From: Podarcis muralis | Lineage: Eukaryota | Direction: 5' to 3' | Assembly: GCF_964188315.1 (NCBI RefSeq) | Contig: NC_135664.1 | Span: forward strand, 77,624,001-77,688,000 | Length of the DNA stretch: 64,000 nucleotides | Part shown: positions 26,560 through 42,035 of the stretch, in pieces | Layout: every line of letters starts with the position of its first letter | How positions within the stretch are numbered: the first letter of the stretch is position 1 | Notes under the pieces: generated by a model | Databases searched by the model: none | What the model saw: the letters and a program-made list of their open reading frames with translations, nothing else | What the model was told of the DNA's origin: nothing | Translations under genes and position numbers: made by a program

Positions 26560-27170
26560 GCCCCCCTTCCCAGGCGGATGCCCCGAGCAGCGAGGGAGAA
26601 GCGCCGCCCCGAGGGGACCCCCAGGGGCCATCTAGTCCCGCCCCGGCGAGGCCAGAGCTCCCCGGGGCCGGCGGGCCACCAGCTGCAGCGCAGGGCCGCC
26701 CCCGGGGGAAGAGGACGACGCCCGGCCCCCTCCGCCCGGACCCCGGAGCGACTCCTCGGGCTCCGCCGGGGAGGACCGGAAGGAGCCCGTGGGGCGACGG
26801 GGCTTCGGGCGAGACTCCGGAAGTGCGTCATCCCCGCGCGCCCCGGCGGGAAATTCAAAGCGGCGGCGGCGAGAGCGACGCGCACGAGGCTGCCTTCCTT
26901 CCCCCGTCGTCCCGCCGCCCGCTCTTCCCCGGCTGCTCCCCCGGAGCCGGGCGCGGAGAGCCAGCGCTGCCTTCCCTGGAAGACCCGGCCTCCCTGGCCT
27001 CGGTCTCTCTCGCCCGGCTTCCCGCTCGGCCCGATGGCGCAGCGGCGAGGGGTCTCGGCCGAAGAAGCCCGCCGGCCGAGGAGGAGCGCGGCGTAAGTAG
27101 CCCCCGGAGGGCGAGGCCCGGTCAGGGGCCCCTTTCAAGCGGGGCGGGTTCCTCCGGGTAGACAGCGGGA
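26560..27170 (+). promoter_or_regulatory. GCNA: GCNA CpG-island promoter: ETS (CCGGAAGT, 26817-26824), CRE half-site (GCGTCA), E2F/CDE-N4-CHR (GGCGG GAAA TTCAAA, 26845-26859)
   Basis: Motifs read directly from the sequence; no ATG between them and the start codon at 27034. Confidence 0.8.
27034..27092 (+). CDS. GCNA: GCNA coding exon 1
   Basis: MAQRRGVSAEEARRPRRSA; GTAAGT donor; inside the CpG island. Confidence 0.75.
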
Positions 27171-30100
27171 GAGGTCGGCCCCTTCGGCAGAATAGAAATA
27201 TGGGGGGGGGGGGGGGAGACACGCCTCTTCGTGGCTCAGGAGAAATGCTAAACTAATCAAGAGAAGGCGTTAGAAGCAAGTAACCAACAGCATTGAAAGG
27301 ATTAAGCACATTCATAGCACAGATTAACTAAAAAAATATATATCACATTTATTATGTTATTTGAATGTTCTTTTGGAGATATGGCCCAAATTCCATTGTC
27401 TGCGTTAGGCTGGGGTGTCTTATTTTATGTGTGTATGGTATGTTGCAACAACCCAATAAAAAGTAGAAAAAGAAATTGAAATATAACGACATCTATGTGT
27501 TTTAACCCCTTTTTGACGCCTTTAAATCTTTTAAGTAAATAGTGCTCAGTGGCATGAAGACATATATAGATGCTCTTCTGAAGAGAACTGGAATTGTGAA
27601 TAAAACATGGTTGCCAACCCTGGAAACAACCCTGGAGTAATTTCACTCTTACTCTTGCCTTTCCGTGTTGAAGATGAACACCTGGAACACGAGAAGAGCT
27701 GCTACTCCAGGCCAAAGGGTCCACCTGGTTTAGCCCCCCTCTTCTGCCAGTGGCCCCCCAGATGCCCCAATGGTGGAAGCCCCTGGGCAGAACCCAAGAG
27801 CCCTCTCCCCATTGGTGATTCCCAGCAACTGGTATTCGGAAGCATCGCTGCTCCAACAATGGAGGCAGAGCATCATCATTGTGGCTCATAGCCATCGATA
27901 GCCCTCTCCTGCTCCATGAATTTGTCCAATCCTCTTTTAAAGCCATCTAGTCTGGTGGCCATCACTGCCTCCTGTGGCAGGGAGTTCCAGAGTTTAACAG
28001 TTTCCACGCTTAGTGTTTCCTTCACCTGGCTGTAAATTCAAACAGCCTTTTGACTTCCAACACAGACGGGCAGCGGCATTGAGTTCTGAGGCCGCACTGA
28101 ACCTGCAGGCTCTTGAGAGACTCGCTCCCAGTGCTGAGGAGAGAGTCATCCACCAGAGCACTTCATAGCGAACCCATTGAAAAGCAGCCAGTCTCCCATC
28201 CTAAATTGGAAATGTCAGAACATTGTGTGCTCCCTGCCATATGCCACTGCAGTGAAGACTTTTGATCAAAGCTTCTTTCTGTGCATTTAGAATATGGCTG
28301 TGCAATGGCTAGCCACTTTCCTTTTACTGTTGTCTGCTTTTCAGCTCCACGAGTTCAGGCAGCGATGACGAGTTTGAAAACTGTAAGTAAAAGCTAATTT
28401 CCTCAGTGGGTCTAAAGATAAGTTATAGCACAAAACCCCCCTCAGAAAAAGCTACTTGTGTAGAAGAAGAAGAAGAAGAGTTTGGATTTGATATCCCACT
28501 TTATCACTACCCGAAGGAAAGCGGCTCACAATCTCCTTTCCCTTCTTCCCCACAACAAACACTCTGTGAGGTGAGTGGGGCTGAGAGACTTCAGAGAAGT
28601 GAAGCCTGGGGAAGGAGTTACCCTCTTTCTCCGGGTTGCACCAACCCAGAAACCTTTTCCTATGTACTGATAGGTTCCCTTTCCATTACACTTTTGCTCT
28701 CAACTAAAATTGGTTCTTCTGTTGCCTTTGGGGTTAACCTGGTCCCCAGCTTTATTGGGGTGCAGGGAGGCTTGTGTTTTCTTCAGACTGCTGCACTGTC
28801 AGCATCTCTTCTCACCCACCGAAAAGCATTTCTTCCCTTGACAGTCGGTCCTCTTTCTGCCATGGACCTGAGTCTCTTGGCCAAAGGTTTCTTCTCTCCT
28901 GTTCTGCAGCTACTGGGGTGAAGCCCTTTGCCAGGCAGGCAGATTCCCTTTCCCTTGAGCTCCGTAACAGATGCCACCTGCATATAGATGCCACCTAACA
29001 TTGAAACGCAGCACAACCTCTGAGTAGGACTTGGTGGGATGCCACCCCAGCACCTCAGGAGGGCAGGCTCTGTGTGTAGCATCGGGGGGGGGGGGGGCTC
29101 AGCAGCAACCTGCCACCTGCTTCTGACTAATTTTGGGTCAGTGGATGGGAGGAGGAGGAGCCCGTCTGTAAAGGCGAGTGAGCCTGACAGTTTAACCTGT
29201 GACTCGTCTCTGGTGGGTCCTCCTGGGGGCCCCAGAGCCAGCGTCTCCTTTGAGGTCTTTCTGCTGGGATCAGCTTCATGCTGGCATCTGAGCCCCTTGA
29301 ATGTGGACCCTGTTCCTTCATCCCTCGTTTCATTTCAACGCTGGCTAGTTTTTGAAGCTGCCACCTTTGTGGGCTTTAGAAGAACAGATTTCAGGAAACA
29401 AAAAAGTGACATTTCTCCCCCTTTCATGGTTTTGACTTAGTTTTATCTAGAATGAAGACCCCCAGACCTGCAACATGCTGCGTTCCAAGGACACAGAGCA
29501 GGTGGGTTCTGCCCAAGGGGGGAGGGCTGGGGTGGGGTTTTTCAAACGGAGAATTGGAAATTGTTTCAGCTGCCTTAAAGTGAGTAGAGTTCTGACTTGG
29601 CATGTGAATTACATAATTGGAATTTGAATTACATAAGCCCACAACTTACACACCTTTAATTTGTGTGTGTTCAGATTCATGCCCTTGGCATGCATAAATA
29701 AATAAATAAGGTAGGTAGGTAGGTAGGTAAATAGAGAGGAGGTGGGCATCCGGGAAAAAAGACTTTGGCAACCCCACCCACCACTGAGCCCAGTATCTGT
29801 TTGGACTATACAAGATGTTGTCTTCAGGCATGATCCTGGAATGCAACCCTTGTGTAAGTTGTGGGCTTACTGTATATTTCACAAGCAAGACCAAAGACTT
29901 GTTCTGCACCCTTCTTTGCCTTCTGACGCTGCTCCCTTTGTCTCTTGTGTCCCAGACTGGATGATTCCAAGGATGATTTCTTCACGTACCTCACAAGCAA
30001 ATATGGATCTGGCAAAAAAGGCAAGTGATCATGGAAAGACCCAGCTGCCAGCCGGAGGAGGCCGGGTGAGCTGTCCTGGTCCAAGGCAGGCCATCCATGT

Positions 30101-33100
30101 GTTTGTCCAGGGAGCAGAGTAGCATCTGGGTGGGGTGGGGTGGGGGGGTTCCCACTTCAAAATGCCTGTTTTCTCCCCCCCCCCCCGGCTGCGTTTTGCC
30201 ATCTCAGCTGGGCTGATGCGGCCCACGCAAGAAACCTGCTCCCTCCCTGGGGACCCTGCGGAGCTCTGAACCTGGGGAGCAGTTGGTGGCCTCCTTTCAC
30301 CCCACAGGAGTGCAGGAATTTGGGCCCCATGTCGGGGCGATATGAGATGGTTGGGGGCACTCACCTTGCTGTGATTTTATTTGCATGCCACCCTTCCACA
30401 GTTCAAACCATGCTCAAGGCAGCTTACAACATAAAAAAGTATATGACTCCAACACAACAAAAGTAGCCATAAACGATACGTAGAACCTTACAAAATACAA
30501 AACCAAACTGAACAGTTTCCACATAAATCACAACCAAATCTAAAATAAGGATCCCCCCCCCCAAAAGCAGCCATAACCGCCTGCCCAAACTAAAAGGCCC
30601 AAGCAACACCCCAGCCCAAGAGCCTTCAGAGCTGAGTTGGTGCACTCTCATGGTCTCTAAATGCAGTGATTGATCTGCTCAGTTTGGCTCCCAAGAAGCG
30701 CCTGTGAAATGTTCTTTGCTGACTTGCAGGGCCGAGGTCTGCTCAGGCGCAAGAGGAGCCTGGGGCGCCTGGAAAGGAAGCTGCTCCCTCTGCCTCGTTT
30801 CTGCCTCGCCTTGTGTTCAGTGAGACTGACAGCGATGATGACGACGACGACTCCGTCTTTGCCAAAGGCACCCCAGGGAACCCCCAGCAGCCCAGACGAG
30901 CGTGTCAGGCCTCAAAGTGGACCTGGAGGAGCTTGCAACGCCCTGTCGCTCGCAGGGGCAGCCCCGACTCTCCCTTGCGCGAGGGGGAAAGGAGTTGCTG
31001 CACGGATCAGTCTGGAGGCACCGCCCAGAGCCAGGAGACAAGAGCAAGCGCTGCGCTGGGATCCGACACCTCCTCCGACGAGGAGGAGATGGACAGCCTC
31101 CTGGTGCGCCTGAAGCAGAAGATGGTCCTTTCTGCAAGGAAGGCGGCGGCGGCAGACCCCAAGGGAGCCACTGGTAAGAGGCAGCTCTGCTCCCCCCTCA
31201 GGAGGGGCCCGGGGGGTAGGAGGAGGGGGCTTCCAGGGTCCTCCCTCCCTCAAACCCCGTGGCCACCATTCAGAGATCGCTGTAGCTTTGGTCCTCAGTT
31301 TGGTTGGGGGAGGAATGCGGGTGGCTTTGTGGGTTAAACCACAGAGCCTAGGGCTTGCCGATCAGAAGGTCGGCGGTTCGAATCCCCATGACGGGGTGAG
31401 CTCCTGTTGCTCGGTCCCTGCTCCTGCCCACCTAGCAGTTCGAAAGCACGTCAGAGTGCAAGTAGATACATAGGTACCTCTCCGGCGGGAAGGTAAACGG
31501 TGTTTCTGTGCTCTGCTCTGGTTCTCCAGAAGCGGCTTAGTCATGCTGGCCACATGAGCCGGAAGCTGCACGCCGGCTCCCTTGGCCAGTAAAGCGAGAT
31601 GAGTGCCGCAACCCCAGAGTCGGTCACGATTGGGCCTAATAGTCAGGGGTCCCTTTACCTTCAGTTTTACCTTGGTTGGTGGAAAGAAAGTGGGGAAGTG
31701 TTTTGTGCAGACGTAATGTTATTTTTCAAAAGAGGAAAGGCTGGGGACCCTCATTCTTTCTCGGGAAGGAGAGTGAAGGCAGGCTGGGTCCTCAGCACCC
31801 ACTTAACACCTTTGGGGGGGTGCAGGGCAAAGGGGGAGATTTCCTGAAACTGCAGCTGTAGGACCTTATTTGCCTTGGGGAAAGTGGGAGCTTGAGGGGA
31901 AAGGGAGCTTTCTGTATGAGGGAGAAGAGCGAGAGCCAGCTAGACTGGACTCCCCCCCCCCCCCGCCAAGGTAACTGAGAAACCATCTCGGGCTGGATCC
32001 CCTGCTGCTTGGGGCAGGTGTCCACAGGTGGCGGGTTGCACATCTCTTTGCCTGCGAGGCTCTCCGTACAGGAGCCGTGAATAAGTGTCCTCCATGAGTA
32101 CATTCTCCCTGAGCTTGAAAACAATCTGCAGGACTATTCCCCTCACCCCCAGTCCTCTTCACACTGTCGTATCATTAGAAATATCCTCATTTTAGGTAAT
32201 GTTAGCCCAGTCCTGGTCCTGAGGACCATTGGCTTCAGAAGTGTGTGGAAACAGGGAACTGGCTGCTGTTCATTGGACTGGTGACGGGTCAGAAGAGGTT
32301 GGGGTTTGCCAGAGGGCCCTGATAAAGCGCCGTGTGGGGGATGTGGGAATGTTCAGAGAGACAGGAGAGGATATATTGTTTAATAATGTCCTTCCCAACT
32401 TGTGTTAACAAGTTCTATAATTTAGCAAAGTAACATTCCCCTTTTAAACTTTTACAGCGGATAGGTTTGCCAGGCTTGTATAAGTTTCCTGGTAAAGCCC
32501 CTTTTATTCCCTCTTAAAAGAGTAGACACAACATAGTCTTATATAAAAGTAAAAAATAGTTTACTCACACATCTTGTTCGCAAATGGATCCCAGAAGGCA
32601 GACTTAAGTTACAAAATATATACACCTGGAATCTATCCCATAAGGAGAAAGTTCCTTTGTACTCTCTTGGCTGGAAGCATCTCAGGCTAAGGAGATGTTG
32701 CTTCTTTGAGGAATGGAGTCAGAGAGAGAGATGGCTGCCTCCCCTGTGCTCTTTTGTAACCTGCACAGGTGAGGTCGCGCCCACCTCTGGTCACATGTAG
32801 AGGAAGTCGGTCCCAGCCCAGGAGGAAACAGGAAGTTCCGACTGGCTGGTTCAGAACCCCCTTTTTATTTCCACTCTAGGAATGTTGTATTTGACAGCTC
32901 TGTGTTTCACACCCCACGGGGGACGTGGCTGGGCTGAGTGTCCAGGAGAGTTGTCTTCCTCCGCCTCCCGTAAGGGTGCAAGTCCTCTGGGTCACCTGAA
33001 GGGTTCAGGGCAGGCAGAAGTGCTGCTTCTGCTTTGCACCAGGTGTTCGCTGACCCTCTTGCGGGATATGGGGGTGGCCATGGGCTCAGCTAGCGCTAGA

Positions 33101-36100
33101 GGGGGCTAAGCCAAGCTTAGGGAGCCCAGCCAGGCCTGTCGAGGCAGATCTTGCTCACGAGGGCTGAGCGGAACCTGCCAGAGGAGAAGCCGGCCTGCCT
33201 GGATCGCGGGTGTCAGAAGTGAGCAGCAAAGAAGGGCTCGGAATTGTTCTGCACGAGGAGCAGGCACTTGGGACGGGGTAGCTGGGCCAGGTGGGCCTTT
33301 GCTTGGGCCCTGCAGATGTTTTACGCTGCCAGACACTTGATTGGGGAGCAGAAAGGGCTTGTGAAGCTGTTTGGCCATGTGCTTTGCCCTGGCTTCCACT
33401 TGGGGCCTTGTCTGCCTGTGCTGAACCTTTGGCTTGTGATTGGTAGAGAGAAGAAACGTCCCGCCTCCCCTTGGAAGCGCCCGCCCGGCTGTGAAGAGCG
33501 AGAGCGCCCTTCCCACGCGGCCCAGATCGCCTCTTCCGGCCACGCCGATCTCTGTGCGAGCTCCGAAGAGCAAGGTGCTCGGTGACATCACCCCGTCCCA
33601 CCAGACGCAGATGAGGTGAGCTCCTCTTTTGCTCATGCCTCTGTTCCCAGCTTTGGACTCTGGCAAAGCAGCTGGCCCAGGCCTGAAGTGGCGAGCCTGG
33701 AAGAACCAGCAAGCCCAGCACCTCCTCCCTGAGGGCATGCCCTCTGCCTTCCATTCGCAGCCTGCAGACTGGGATGCACGTTCTGGATCCGGACCCCAGT
33801 GTCAGTGGCTTCCATACAGGAGCTGCAGAAAAATGTGGTTGCTCAAGGCAGCCCTGGACTCAGAAAGGTTGGCAACCTCTGGACTAGTCCCTGGCGAGTC
33901 TCATAGAGGGAGCCTGGGCTGCCCTTTCCTTCCCTCTCATGGGTCTTTGCCTCCTCAGGAGTTCCTGCCAGGTGCAGGGCTGCTTCTTGCAAGAGCTGTC
34001 CGACCCAGAATCCCAGCACTCTAAGCATTTCCGGAGAAGGAAGGGGGAGCTGGCCCAGAACCTCTATGATTTCTACAACCGTTCCGTGTTTGAGCAAAAG
34101 GTACAGAGCTGGAATGGGGTTGTTTCTGCTCCAAGCAGATGGGCTGCTGGGTCTGGGTTCTGCTCGTGGCTGCTGACCCCTTGTCTCTCCTCCTATGGAT
34201 CCTGTGGCCTCTTGAGAGGGTTTGGGAAAGGGGGCAGGAGGGCAGCAGCGAGAGGTTCCTTGCCTGCTATATGAGCTGCCTCTGGACTCTTGCCTGGATT
34301 CCTGCATCAGCAAAGCTGAAGTAAAGAGTCACGCGACTGAGTGGGGGCTGTGCAAAAGCAATGCTGGGCTCTACAGTCCAGTAATGCTGGGCTCTACAGG
34401 CTCCCTACTTTGAAACCAAAGAGAAGACCGAGAGGAAGATTGTCTGGTCTCTGCTCCTCCGCAGAGCCAAGCTGCACAAAGAGGGCTTAGCGCACGCCTG
34501 CCCTGGGGAGTCAGTGAAACGAAAGAGCACAGGGAGTGTTGTGAAAGGCCAGCCGGCCGGGCTCCCCTTGTCTCTGGCCAGCCTGGCCCTCAGCTCAGAA
34601 GTCAGGAGTGTGGCTCCAGGGCCGGGTAGGAGCTAAGCTGCTTCTCCCCCTTGTCCTTTCAGTTGCCAGAGAATATGGAGATTGTCTGGAACAAAAAGAT
34701 GCGGAAAACTGCCGGGTGCTGTGTGAGTGGCCAGCTGAAGGGCCCTGAGGGGCAGCGCTATGCCCGGATAATGCTGTCAGAGAAAGTCTGTGACTCTGCA
34801 GGCAAGTGGGGGGGGGAGGGGTCTTCCTGGGGTCCTGAGGCTAATGCTGCGTTTGGATGGCATCGCACAGATTCAGAAAGGAGCTTTGAGGTTGAAGAAG
34901 TAGAGGGGAGAGTAGTGGTATTCTTTTTATTTCCTTGCATCCAAATCCCACCTTTCTTCCACCCTGGAGCTCAAGGGGGGGGGGTCTATGTGGCTCCCAG
35001 GCTGTCACCCATCCAGGCACTGATCAGGCTCAGATTTGCTTGATCTCAGTAAGGGTGGGGCCTTATCCCAGGTCACATCCTGCTCCCCACCATAGTAGAA
35101 GACGTGTCTTGATTACTGGCTTGGGACATTATCCCAAGCATTCCTCTTTGTAAACTCTAGCGTGAATGCCATGCTGTCAATCAAGACCCCAGGGGTCACA
35201 ATGTATTGACAGGCCTTGACCAAGCGTGGCAGGTGCAGCCTGTCTTCCCTTGCCCTGCTGGTTCTCTGGTCTCCTGGATAGGCTTGTTCAAGGAAGTGCA
35301 AGGGAAAAAGGGTCACTCAAGGTGTGGGAAGCTGGTGAGTGGGGATAGGCGATATATTGATATATCATCCAAAACCGGTTTGAAGTCCATTTTGTGATAT
35401 TGGTTTCATAATTCTTGATCTGACTATATATCGCAAATCGTCTCTGTGTGTTATGCAAAAATGCGGGGGAAACTGTGAAGCCAGCCAATGCCTCTCCATA
35501 GCTCCATCCTTATTTCAGGCGCTGTGATATGTCACTATATTGCAGTTTAGCTGGGGATATCTTGTGATTTGGAAAGCCAGAGATGGCCCAGCCCTGGTGG
35601 TGAGCCTGGTGCATGTGCGCCTGCGCATCAACTGGAATCGTGTCTCCTCGCTCCATGCCTCTCCTGTCTTGCGCAGATCGACTCCGGGACACTCTGATCC
35701 ACGAACTGTGCCACGCAGCTGCCTGGCTGATCCACGGGGTCCGAGACGGCCACGGCCGGTTTTGGCGCTTATATGCAAAGAAGTCGGCTGTGGTCCACCC
35801 AGAGCTCCCAGTGGTGTCGCGATGCCACAACTATGAGATCAAGTACAAGTTCACCTACGAGTGCTGCCGGTGCAAAAACACGTGAGTGAGGATCAGGGCC
35901 TGTTCCTGGTGAGGCATTTGAGCCCCGGTGTGCGATCCCGGCTCAGCTATTGTAGCTAGTCCTGAGTGAGACCCATATCCTGTTCGAAGAGAGTCTCTGC
36001 ATCTGCTAGTGACTCTAAGAATCTCCAGCTTTCCAGGGCCCTGATCCTGTAAGCCCTCATGGTTTTGTGGGCTAACCCCACAGAAGGTGATCAGACCCCA

Positions 36101-41021: not shown

Positions 41022-42035
41022 TCAAGGCTGCTGGCTGCTTGTGGGCATCGCTTGCTGCTTGCTGCTGCCCTTGGGGCTCCAGAGTGGTGGCAAACCTTTG
41101 GCGGCGGCTGCTTGAGCATCCCTCTTTGCGGACCCTTGAGTGCTCGCGCCCCAAGAGGATTTTTGTTCACCCTTGGGAGGCTGGCTACTGGGAGTGGGGC
41201 CAGTCTTCTGAGCCGCCTGTTGCTGGAGCCAGCGGCGCATGTGTGCCAGGCCCCGCCCATACTGGAGCTCCCACAGGAGCTGCTCCTTCTGCTCCCTCAG
41301 CTGCTGCCGGAAGGCTTTCAGGCCTTTAGCTCGCTGGATGAGGCCGAGGAGCTCGTTGCGCAGCCGCCTGTTCTCCTCCTTCACTCGGTTGGTGTGCTGG
41401 ATGAGGCTGCGCACGGCTTCCTTCTCGGCCTTCTTGGCCAGGGCCTGGACCTTCTGCTCCGCCTGCACCTCGTACTCCGCCTTCTGGTGCAGGTACTTGC
41501 TCTTGAGCAAGCGCATTTCCTCCGAGTGCTGGATCTTCATGGCCAGCAGCTCCTTCTCCAGCTCCCGGATGCGGAGGAGCTGCTCGGACTGCAGCTCCTT
41601 GAAGGGCTTGAGCTCCTCAACCTCCTTGGTCATGAGGGAGAACTTGGTCTCCATCTCAATCAGCTGGCTCCTCATCTCCGTCTCCTTGTCCGTGTACTGG
41701 GAGGTCAGCTCCTCCTTCTGCTTCAGGACGCTGGTGAGGTCAAAGAGGTTCTGCTCGTTGAGGGTGGTGATGGCGTCCTGGCACCGGGCAGCGCGCCTGT
41801 TCAGGTAGCTCAGGTAGGCCTTGCTGTTCTGCCGGATCTCCTGCGCTTCCTTGTCCAGGAACTCGTTCCTGCTCTGGAACTGGTCCACCCATTGCGTGTA
41901 GGTGTGGATGTGCTCCGCCAGAATGAGGGACTCCTTCTTCAGGGACTGCTCTTGCTCCGTCAAGAGCGGCCCAGTCGTGCTCTGGCTCTTGGCGATGCTC
42001 TTCCGAGCCTTGGACCTGGTCTTCTTTGTCGCCAT
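41022..42035 (-). CDS. CCDC166: CCDC166-like coiled-coil protein (DUF4515 family), 337 aa, uninterrupted CDS
   Basis: Aligns by recall with CCDC166 (LNEQN..DL...EL...Y..RE..MR.QL.EME...; ELKPFKELQ.EQL.RIRELEKELL.M; AEKEA.R.LI.HT). Kozak cacagcATGG; in-frame upstream TGA; splice acceptor at 42064-42065. Orthologue versus paralogue is not resolved. Confidence 0.82.
   Translation of the reverse strand: MATKKTRSKARKSIAKSQSTTGPLLTEQEQSLKKESLILAEHIHTYTQWVDQFQSRNEFLDKEAQEIRQNSKAYLSYLNRRAARCQDAITTLNEQNLFDLTSVLKQKEELTSQYTDKETEMRSQLIEMETKFSLMTKEVEELKPFKELQSEQLLRIRELEKELLAMKIQHSEEMRLLKSKYLHQKAEYEVQAEQKVQALAKKAEKEAVRSLIQHTNRVKEENRRLRNELLGLIQRAKGLKAFRQQLREQKEQLLWELQYGRGLAHMRRWLQQQAAQKTGPTPSSQPPKGEQKSSWGASTQGSAKRDAQAAAAKGLPPLWSPKGSSKQQAMPTSSQQP

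What the first reader, a model, noticed from the sequence alone, without database searches (positions are those of the whole stretch)
30011..30071. GC donor versus downstream GT donor: a built-in poison splice switch in GCNA exon 4
Seen: the productive frame needs AAG|GCAAGT at 30020/30021. A stronger canonical donor, CGG|GTGAGC, lies 45 nt downstream (30065/30066) in the same phase, but the extension contains an in-frame TGA (30026-30028). Known: GC-AG introns are rare (about 1%) and often take part in alternative 5' splice-site choice; early stops trigger NMD. Inference: default splicing yields an NMD or truncated product, and full-length GCNA may need a germline splicing factor, a second lock on somatic expression.
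Basis: partly seen in the sequence, partly recalled or inferred. Interest (0 to 1): 0.7.

Follow-up and report, generated by a model that had tools for sequence, protein, structure and literature searches.

The report
Ordinary old GC-AG intron in GCNA
The unusual GC splice signal after exon 4 of this wall-lizard GCNA gene is real, very old and is the one used in assembled transcripts, while the nearby GT site is a young, poorly conserved decoy, so there is no good evidence for a built-in poison switch.

Summary
Exon 4 (29956-30020) ends in AAG|GCAAGT. An in-frame TGA lies at 30026-28. CGG|GTGAGC lies 45 nt downstream, in phase.

The window encodes Podarcis muralis GCNA; all nine exon translations match a RefSeq model exactly.

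Evidence that the GC donor is the working site:
- Transcript contigs from three independent studies all carry the junction 30020>30730 (GC..AG). None carries 30065>30730.
- The GC donor is conserved in gecko, three lacertids, an agamid, a snake and a quail. A tortoise has GT there.
- Its flanks are a perfect consensus.

Evidence that the downstream GT is a decoy:
- It occurs only in Podarcis. Zootoca has CT at that position, and no other species has an equivalent.
- Introns 3 and 9 of the same gene have equal or better decoys within 100 nt. Intron 9 repeats the "poison" geometry, with an in-phase GT at +27 and an in-frame TGA.

One older RefSeq isoform (X3) does include the 45-nt extension, so minor unproductive use is possible.

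Untested: tissue-specific usage. The only raw-read run had almost no GCNA coverage.

Verdict: an ordinary, ancient, constitutive GC-AG intron with a cryptic neighbour. "Default = NMD, germline factor needed" is not supported. The scan had not noted this before on other DNA.

The parts
29441..29501 (+). GCNA exon 3 (61 nt)
   Evidence: Joints 28382>29441 and 29501>29956 in transcript contigs. The frame is kept.
29956..30020 (+). GCNA exon 4 (65 nt, LDDSKDDFFTYLTSKYGSGKK)
   Evidence: Joints. The translation is an exact substring of RefSeq P. muralis models P0265 and P0263.
30018..30026 (+). GC donor AAG|GCAAGT of intron 4
   Evidence: The junction is present in X1, X3 and X6 contigs (listed as 30018>30728 with 3 ambiguous letters, which gives 30020>30730). 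It is one of only two GC sites in the 64-kb window, on either strand, with flank score >= 8.6 bits. It is conserved in 7 of 8 sauropsids.
30026..30028 (+). In-frame TGA directly behind the donor consensus (third codon of any read-through)
   Evidence: A stop sits at this codon in 7 of 8 species, as TGA, TAG or TAA.
30021..30065 (+). 45-nt potential exon extension
   Evidence: It is encoded in the older RefSeq isoform X3 (P0267), there with a 1-nt indel relative to the window.
30063..30071 (+). Downstream in-phase GT site CGG|GTGAGC (cryptic or minor donor)
   Evidence: No joint from it appears in any contig. It is TGG|GTGAGC in P. lilfordi and TGG|CTGAGC in Zootoca.
30021..30729 (+). Intron 4, GC-AG, 709 nt
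   Evidence: 'skips 709'.
30730..31173 (+). GCNA exon 5 (acidic, disordered region)
34799..34807 (+). Second GC donor, CAG|GCAAGT of intron 8 (needed for ...KVCDSA|DRLRDTLIHELCH)
   Evidence: It is GC in the three lacertids and GT in five other species.
35882..35914 (+). Control: the intron 9 GT donor is followed by an in-frame TGA (35883-85) and an in-phase decoy CTG|GTGAGG at +27

Best explanation
Intron 4 of Podarcis muralis GCNA is an ordinary U2-type GC-AG intron that has carried its GC donor since early sauropsid evolution.

How it works:
- The C at +2 costs one U1 base pair. This is offset by a perfect match at all other donor positions (AAG|GCAAGT).
- The site is spliced constitutively to the acceptor at 30729/30730, giving the productive ...SGKK|GPRSAQ... 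protein.
- The GT 45 nt downstream is an evolutionarily young cryptic donor seen only in the Podarcis lineage. At most it is used as a minor by-product.
- When it is used, or when the intron is retained, the TGA at 30026-28 ends translation after 76 codons. NMD is then expected; this step is inferred from the 50-55-nt rule.

Shown: the junction, its conservation and the non-conservation of the decoy. Inferred: that splicing is constitutive in all tissues, and the NMD fate of the variant.
For: -: single contigs in X1, X3 and X6 (three studies) run exon 3>4>5>6>7 with the GC..AG joint. No 30065>30730 joint appears.
- the orthologous donor is G|GCAAGT in Sphaerodactylus, Zootoca, P. lilfordi, Pogona, Pantherophis and Coturnix, and G|GTAAGT in Chelonoidis.
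- the donor flanks score 8.63 bits. Only the two predicted GCNA GC donors reach this score in 64 kb on both strands.
- (PMC3167603): GC donors are weaker at +2 but have a stronger consensus elsewhere, which compensates.
- the +45 GT is present only in the window and P. lilfordi. Zootoca has CT.
- decoys of equal or better score lie at +78 (intron 3) and +27 (intron 9, in phase, behind an in-frame TGA).
- the current RefSeq models P0265 and P0263 contain all nine exon translations exactly, so they use the same junctions.
- the GKK|G(P/L)R junction peptide recurs in other lizards and an axolotl model.
Against: - The older RefSeq isoform X3 of P. muralis (P0267) reads through the 45-nt extension into exon 5. 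Some transcript evidence for the GT donor may therefore exist.
- Logan contigs drop minor paths, and NMD would deplete the variant, so its absence from contigs is weak evidence.
- The tissues of X1, X3 and X6 are unknown. If all are gonadal, somatic splicing is untested.
- By U1 duplex energy the GT site is stronger (-10.4 vs -6.7 kcal/mol).
- X6 has unexplained extra depth in 30000-30199.
Confidence: 0.75

Rival explanations
1. The GC donor and the downstream GT donor compete. Outside the germline the GT donor wins and the transcript is destroyed by NMD. A germline factor promotes the GC donor, adding a splicing lock on somatic GCNA expression.
For: - The geometry is real.
- The GT site pairs better with U1.
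- RefSeq isoform X3 includes the extension.
- GC-AG introns are enriched in alternative 5' splice-site events (PMC7242645, PMC2490688).
- The one bulk raw-read RNA run had almost no GCNA reads, which would fit either silencing or decay.
Against: - The only junction in three transcript assemblies is GC-AG.
- The decoy is missing in Zootoca and in every non-Podarcis species, while the GC donor is about as old as sauropsids. Any such lock would therefore be confined to one genus.
- The same geometry occurs at intron 9 by chance.
- The 45-nt stretch is no better conserved than the rest of the intron.
- No significant RNA structure was found around the sites (z = -1.25).
Confidence: 0.1
2. The downstream GT is never used in vivo. 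RefSeq isoform X3 is an annotation artefact of the older assembly, and the site is pure intronic noise.
For: - No joint from 30065 appears.
- X3 and X4 exist only as '.1' records, and only X1 and X2 have '.2' versions in the cluster.
- X4 needs a junction shifted by 1 nt with no canonical sites, which shows that release held doubtful models.
- X3 needs a 1-nt indel relative to the window.
Against: RefSeq alternative isoforms are normally built from transcript alignments (own knowledge; I could not inspect the evidence). The site is a decent donor.
Confidence: 0.3
3. The extended isoform is productive. Translation starts at the ATG inside exon 4 (30005) and yields an N-terminally shortened GCNA, as in the RefSeq X3 coding sequence.
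For: The P0267 sequence begins MDLAKKASD... and continues into exon 5.
Against: In the window's haplotype that ATG frame (frame 2) reaches the GT donor out of phase with exon 5. It works only with the 1-nt insertion of the older assembly. The upstream ATG and its ORF would be translated first.
Confidence: 0.03

Closest known systems
Constitutive U2-type GC-AG introns (about 0.8% of protein-coding introns; PMC7242645, PMC3167603)
   Same: It has GC at +1/+2 and AG at the 3' end. All other donor positions match the consensus, which compensates for the +2 mismatch. The junction is seen in RNA, and the donor is conserved over long evolutionary time.
   Different: Nothing essential differs. One notable point is that the same gene in lacertids carries a second, younger GC donor at intron 8.
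GC/GT alternative 5' splice-site pairs, such as ING4 and C. elegans let-2 intron 10 (as described in PMC7242645)
   Same: A weak GC donor has a canonical GT close by, and choice between them would change the product.
   Different: Here only the GC junction is seen in transcript contigs. The GT partner is not conserved, and no regulation has been shown.
Regulated unproductive splicing (AS-NMD, 'poison' exons or extensions)
   Same: The extension would introduce a stop codon well upstream of later exon junctions.
   Different: Poison elements of known regulators are typically highly conserved (own knowledge). This one is absent in a species of the same family, and neither the NMD isoform nor its regulation was observed.

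Membership tests
U2-type GC-AG intron | GC at intron +1/+2 and AG at the 3' end | tested here: met
   GC at 30021-22 and AG at 30728-29.
U2-type GC-AG intron | Strong consensus at the remaining donor positions (MAG|GCAAGT) | tested here: met
   8.63 bits over 7 flanking positions, the second highest of the ten sites scored (intron 8's GC donor scores 8.79); only two such GC sites in 64 kb.
U2-type GC-AG intron | The exact junction is present in transcripts | tested here: met
   X1, X3 and X6 contigs from three studies carry it. The joint is ambiguous over 3 letters, and only the +2 register gives GC..AG.
U2-type GC-AG intron | Not a U12-type intron (no /RTATCCTT donor) | tested here: met
   the donor is GCAAGTGA.
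AS-NMD / poison splice switch | Both competing junctions are observed in RNA | tested here: inconclusive
   Only GC-AG appears in contigs. The extension is seen only in RefSeq model X3. The raw-read run had no coverage.
AS-NMD / poison splice switch | The alternative form carries a stop more than 50-55 nt upstream of a later exon junction | tested here: met
   The TGA is at 30026-28. Junctions after exons 5-9 lie far downstream.
AS-NMD / poison splice switch | The alternative site and its surroundings are conserved | tested here: not met
   Zootoca has CT. No equivalent exists in Pogona, snake, gecko, quail or tortoise.
AS-NMD / poison splice switch | The isoform ratio depends on tissue or a factor, and the poison isoform rises when NMD is blocked | not testable with these tools
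GCNA/ACRC (SprT-type protease with acidic disordered N-terminus) | SprT-like domain with an HExxH motif | tested here: met
   PF10263 at E = 1.2e-09 (exon 9) and 2.4e-05 (exon 8). HELCH is visible.
GCNA/ACRC (SprT-type protease with acidic disordered N-terminus) | C-terminal SprT zinc ribbon | tested here: inconclusive
   PF17283 at 20.2 bits, below the 28.1 cut-off, on the last-exon piece alone.
GCNA/ACRC (SprT-type protease with acidic disordered N-terminus) | Orthology to annotated GCNA | tested here: met
   there is an exact match to P. muralis RefSeq models, and relatives are named germ cell nuclear acidic protein across vertebrates.

The most novel reading that the evidence does not exclude
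In Podarcis only, a recently arisen GT donor 45 nt behind the ancient weak GC donor is used at a meaningful, tissue-dependent rate. GCNA output would then be trimmed by unproductive splicing, as a lineage-specific AS-NMD throttle. A broader variant is that the two GC donors of lacertid GCNA (2 of about 10 introns, against 0.8% background) make the gene's expression unusually dependent on U1 or splicing-factor levels.
Probability: 0.1. Interest if true: 0.45.

Novelty: already known. Interest (0 to 1): 0.18.

Why it matters
It matters little beyond annotation. The work confirms that the GC-AG junction in lizard GCNA is real and ancient, so gene finders should not replace it with the nearby GT. 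It also shows that 'GC donor plus nearby GT plus stop' is a chance-level pattern that should not be read as a switch without junction counts. If the minor variant proved to be regulated, it would be a small, genus-specific example of AS-NMD in a DNA-protein-crosslink repair gene.

Tried and rejected
- Word search with exon 5 alone found nothing. Its length window excludes full-length GCNA.
- Word search with residues 1-45 of isoform X3, to find the extension peptide in other annotations, found nothing. It searches only cluster representatives, so the blank says little.
- Look-ups for Rhineura, Paroedura and Hemicordylus isoforms were not on record.
- The raw-read RNA run X22 gave essentially no GCNA exon coverage, so there are no quantitative junction counts.
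- RNA folding around both donors was not significant (z = -1.25), so there is no case for the GT being hidden in a structure.
- I considered selection for the stop codon behind the donor, which is present in 7 of 8 species as TGA, TAG or TAA. I rejected it as unproven. Seven of eight species have two purines at +7/+8, and three of the four purine pairs after T give a stop (0.75^7 = 0.13). Intron 2 shows a similarly conserved GTAAGTAA.
One local script joined exons only to check the frame.

Full report
**Observation.**
- Exon 4 runs from 29956 to 30020 and ends in AAG. It is followed by GCAAGT, with GC at 30021-22.
- In the coding frame a read-through gives G|GC AAG TGA, with the stop at 30026-28.
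- CGG|GTGAGC has its GT at 30066-67, 45 nt downstream and in the same phase.
- The acceptor AG is at 30728-29 and exon 5 begins at 30730.
- A phase-by-phase check of nine exons (27034-35881) keeps one open frame. The HELCH metalloprotease motif lies in exon 9. Exons 8 and 9 hit Pfam SprT-like PF10263.

**Identity.**
- A search of 1.84 billion representatives with exon 9 returned GCNA relatives. A word search named them germ cell nuclear acidic protein (ACRC) across reptiles, birds and amphibians.
- The 90% cluster of the Podarcis lilfordi protein contains Podarcis muralis RefSeq models.
- All nine exon translations of the window are exact substrings of XP_028602321.2 (P0265).

**RNA evidence.**
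- I used the one reads call on 28200-34199 with three contig runs from three studies (X1, X3, X6) and one raw-read RNA run (X22).
- In each contig run a single contig joins exon 3>4>5>6>7.
- The exon 4/5 joint is listed as 30018>30728, 'skips 709', with three letters (AGG) that fit either side. Only the +2 register, 30020>30730, gives recognised ends (GC..AG).
- No contig shows 30065>30730.
- The runs are labelled 'RNA?', but five consecutive intron-less joints in contigs of about 85-145 Mb assemblies indicate cDNA. A retrocopy in DNA cannot be formally excluded, because table 5b was not given.
- Contigs drop minor paths, and NMD would deplete a poison isoform. This shows that the GC junction dominates at steady state. 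It does not show that the other junction is absent.
- X22 had almost no reads on GCNA exons, so no quantitative or tissue comparison was possible.

**Strength and chance.**
- The U1 duplex energy favours the GT site (-10.4 vs -6.7 kcal/mol).
- The seven positions other than +1/+2 score 8.63 bits for the GC site and 4.51 for the GT site. The PWM was recalled from memory and is only a rough ruler.
- In the whole 64-kb window, on both strands, only two GC sites reach 8.6 bits. Both sit exactly at predicted GCNA exon ends: intron 4 and intron 8, CAG|GCAAGT at 34801/34802.
- This fits the published rule that GC donors compensate for the +2 mismatch with a stronger consensus elsewhere (PMC3167603).
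- GT sites as good as the decoy occur at 0.58 per kb in the window and 1.3 per kb in the gene.
- Three of nine real donors have such a decoy within 100 nt downstream: intron 3 at +78, intron 4 at +45 and intron 9 at +27.
- The intron 9 case is in phase and lies behind an in-frame TGA (AC|G TGA). The supposed switch geometry therefore recurs at an ordinary GT intron of the same gene.

**Conservation.** I fetched the genomic loci of seven orthologues and mapped their annotated proteins.
- The orthologous donor is G|GCAAGT in Sphaerodactylus, Zootoca, P. lilfordi, Pogona, Pantherophis and Coturnix. It is G|GTAAGT in Chelonoidis.
- On the usual tree (own knowledge) the simplest reading is a GC donor in the sauropsid ancestor with one reversion in the turtle lineage.
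- An in-phase GT at +45 exists only in the window (CGG|GTGAGC) and in P. lilfordi (TGG|GTGAGC).
- Zootoca, in the same family, has TGG|CTGAGC in an otherwise well-aligned intron (93% mean column identity).
- None of the other species has a comparable in-phase site within 200 nt. The snake has only an out-of-phase GT at +4, inside the GCAAGT consensus.
- The 45-nt stretch is no better conserved than the neighbouring intron.
- A stop at the third read-through codon is present in 7 of 8 species (TGA, TAG or TAA). This is explained well enough by a purine preference at +7/+8 after the consensus T, so I do not claim selection for it.

- The cluster also holds an older RefSeq isoform of P. muralis, X3 (XP_028602323.1, P0267). 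Its N-terminus is MDLAKKASDQWKDPAASRRRLGPRSAQ....
- This is exon 4 read from its internal ATG, then the 45-nt extension, then exon 5. The model therefore uses the downstream GT donor.
- It needs a 1-nt insertion relative to the window and has CTG where the window has CCG. It comes from another haplotype or assembly.
- In the window's haplotype that internal-ATG frame would not join exon 5 in frame.
- The real consequence of this splice would be termination at the TGA after 76 codons of the main ORF. The CDS assigned to X3 probably just reflects choice of the longest ORF (inference).
- I could not inspect the evidence behind X3.
- X3 and its companion X4 appear only as '.1' records. X4 requires a junction shifted by one base with no canonical sites.

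**Conclusion.**
- The most likely reading (about 0.75) is an ancient, constitutive GC-AG intron.
- Beside it lies a lineage-young cryptic GT donor that is used, if at all, as a minor unproductive by-product.
This claim is contradicted by the dominant junction in three transcriptomes and by the non-conservation of the decoy.
- It is not formally excluded for somatic tissues of Podarcis (about 0.1).
- GC-AG introns are indeed over-represented in alternative 5' splice-site events (PMC7242645; PMC2490688). Most, however, are simply spliced.

- Searches were done exon by exon, by reference.
- The joined spliced protein was not sent to any search tool. One local script joined exons only to check the frame.

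Noticed in passing
window 34799-34807: There is a second GC-AG intron in the same gene: the intron 8 donor is CAG|GCAAGT. It is GC in the window, P. lilfordi and Zootoca, and GT in Pogona, Pantherophis, Sphaerodactylus, Chelonoidis and Coturnix. This looks like a lacertid-specific GT>GC change. Two GC donors in about 10 introns is unusual against a 0.8% background.
   Followed up: partly
window 35882-35914: The intron 9 GT donor is followed by an in-frame TGA (35883-85) and an in-phase decoy CTG|GTGAGG at +27. This is the same 'poison' geometry as at intron 4.
   Followed up: partly
L002 4079-5612 (Zootoca): The RefSeq Zootoca model P0153 has a 15-aa insert (GKYKKRLGNVFCCLA) between exons 4 and 5. 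It maps to GC AAG TA after exon 4 plus 36 nt upstream of the exon 5 acceptor. I could find no canonical acceptor, and a CCCTAA telomere-like repeat abuts it. In the window the same 36 nt hold two TGA codons.
   Followed up: partly
P0268 (P. muralis isoform X4, older release) versus window 29973-30732: The model reads exon 4 in another frame (MISSRTSQANMDLAKK) and then exon 5 in the main frame. This needs a junction shifted by 1 nt with no canonical ends, so it is probably an artefact.
   Followed up: no
window 30000-30199, run X6: The mean contig depth is 6.74, where the spliced contig alone accounts for about 1.3. Some other contig lies on the start of intron 4. It could be unspliced RNA, a G/C-run repeat or an extension path, and remains unresolved.
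   Followed up: no
P0265 versus window about 26590-27033: The current RefSeq X1 (680 aa) extends the ORF about 150 residues upstream of the ATG at 27034, through the CpG island. It is Arg/Pro/Gly-rich and probably over-extended.
   Followed up: no
window 30021-30071 versus older P. muralis models: There are haplotype differences within the species. The decoy's -3 base is C in the window and T in the older model (RRRP vs RRRL). The extension has a 1-nt indel, and exon 5 differs (AQAQEE vs AQVQEV).
   Followed up: partly
window 41022-42035 (- strand): There is an uninterrupted 337-aa ORF with coiled-coil-like sequence (MATKKTRSKARK...) downstream of GCNA on the opposite strand. It may be a single-exon gene or a retrocopy.
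   Followed up: no
window 28450-28600 and 31330-31640: These stretches show very high RNA contig depth. The sequences look like lizard SINEs (own recognition), one in intron 2 and one in intron 5.
   Followed up: no
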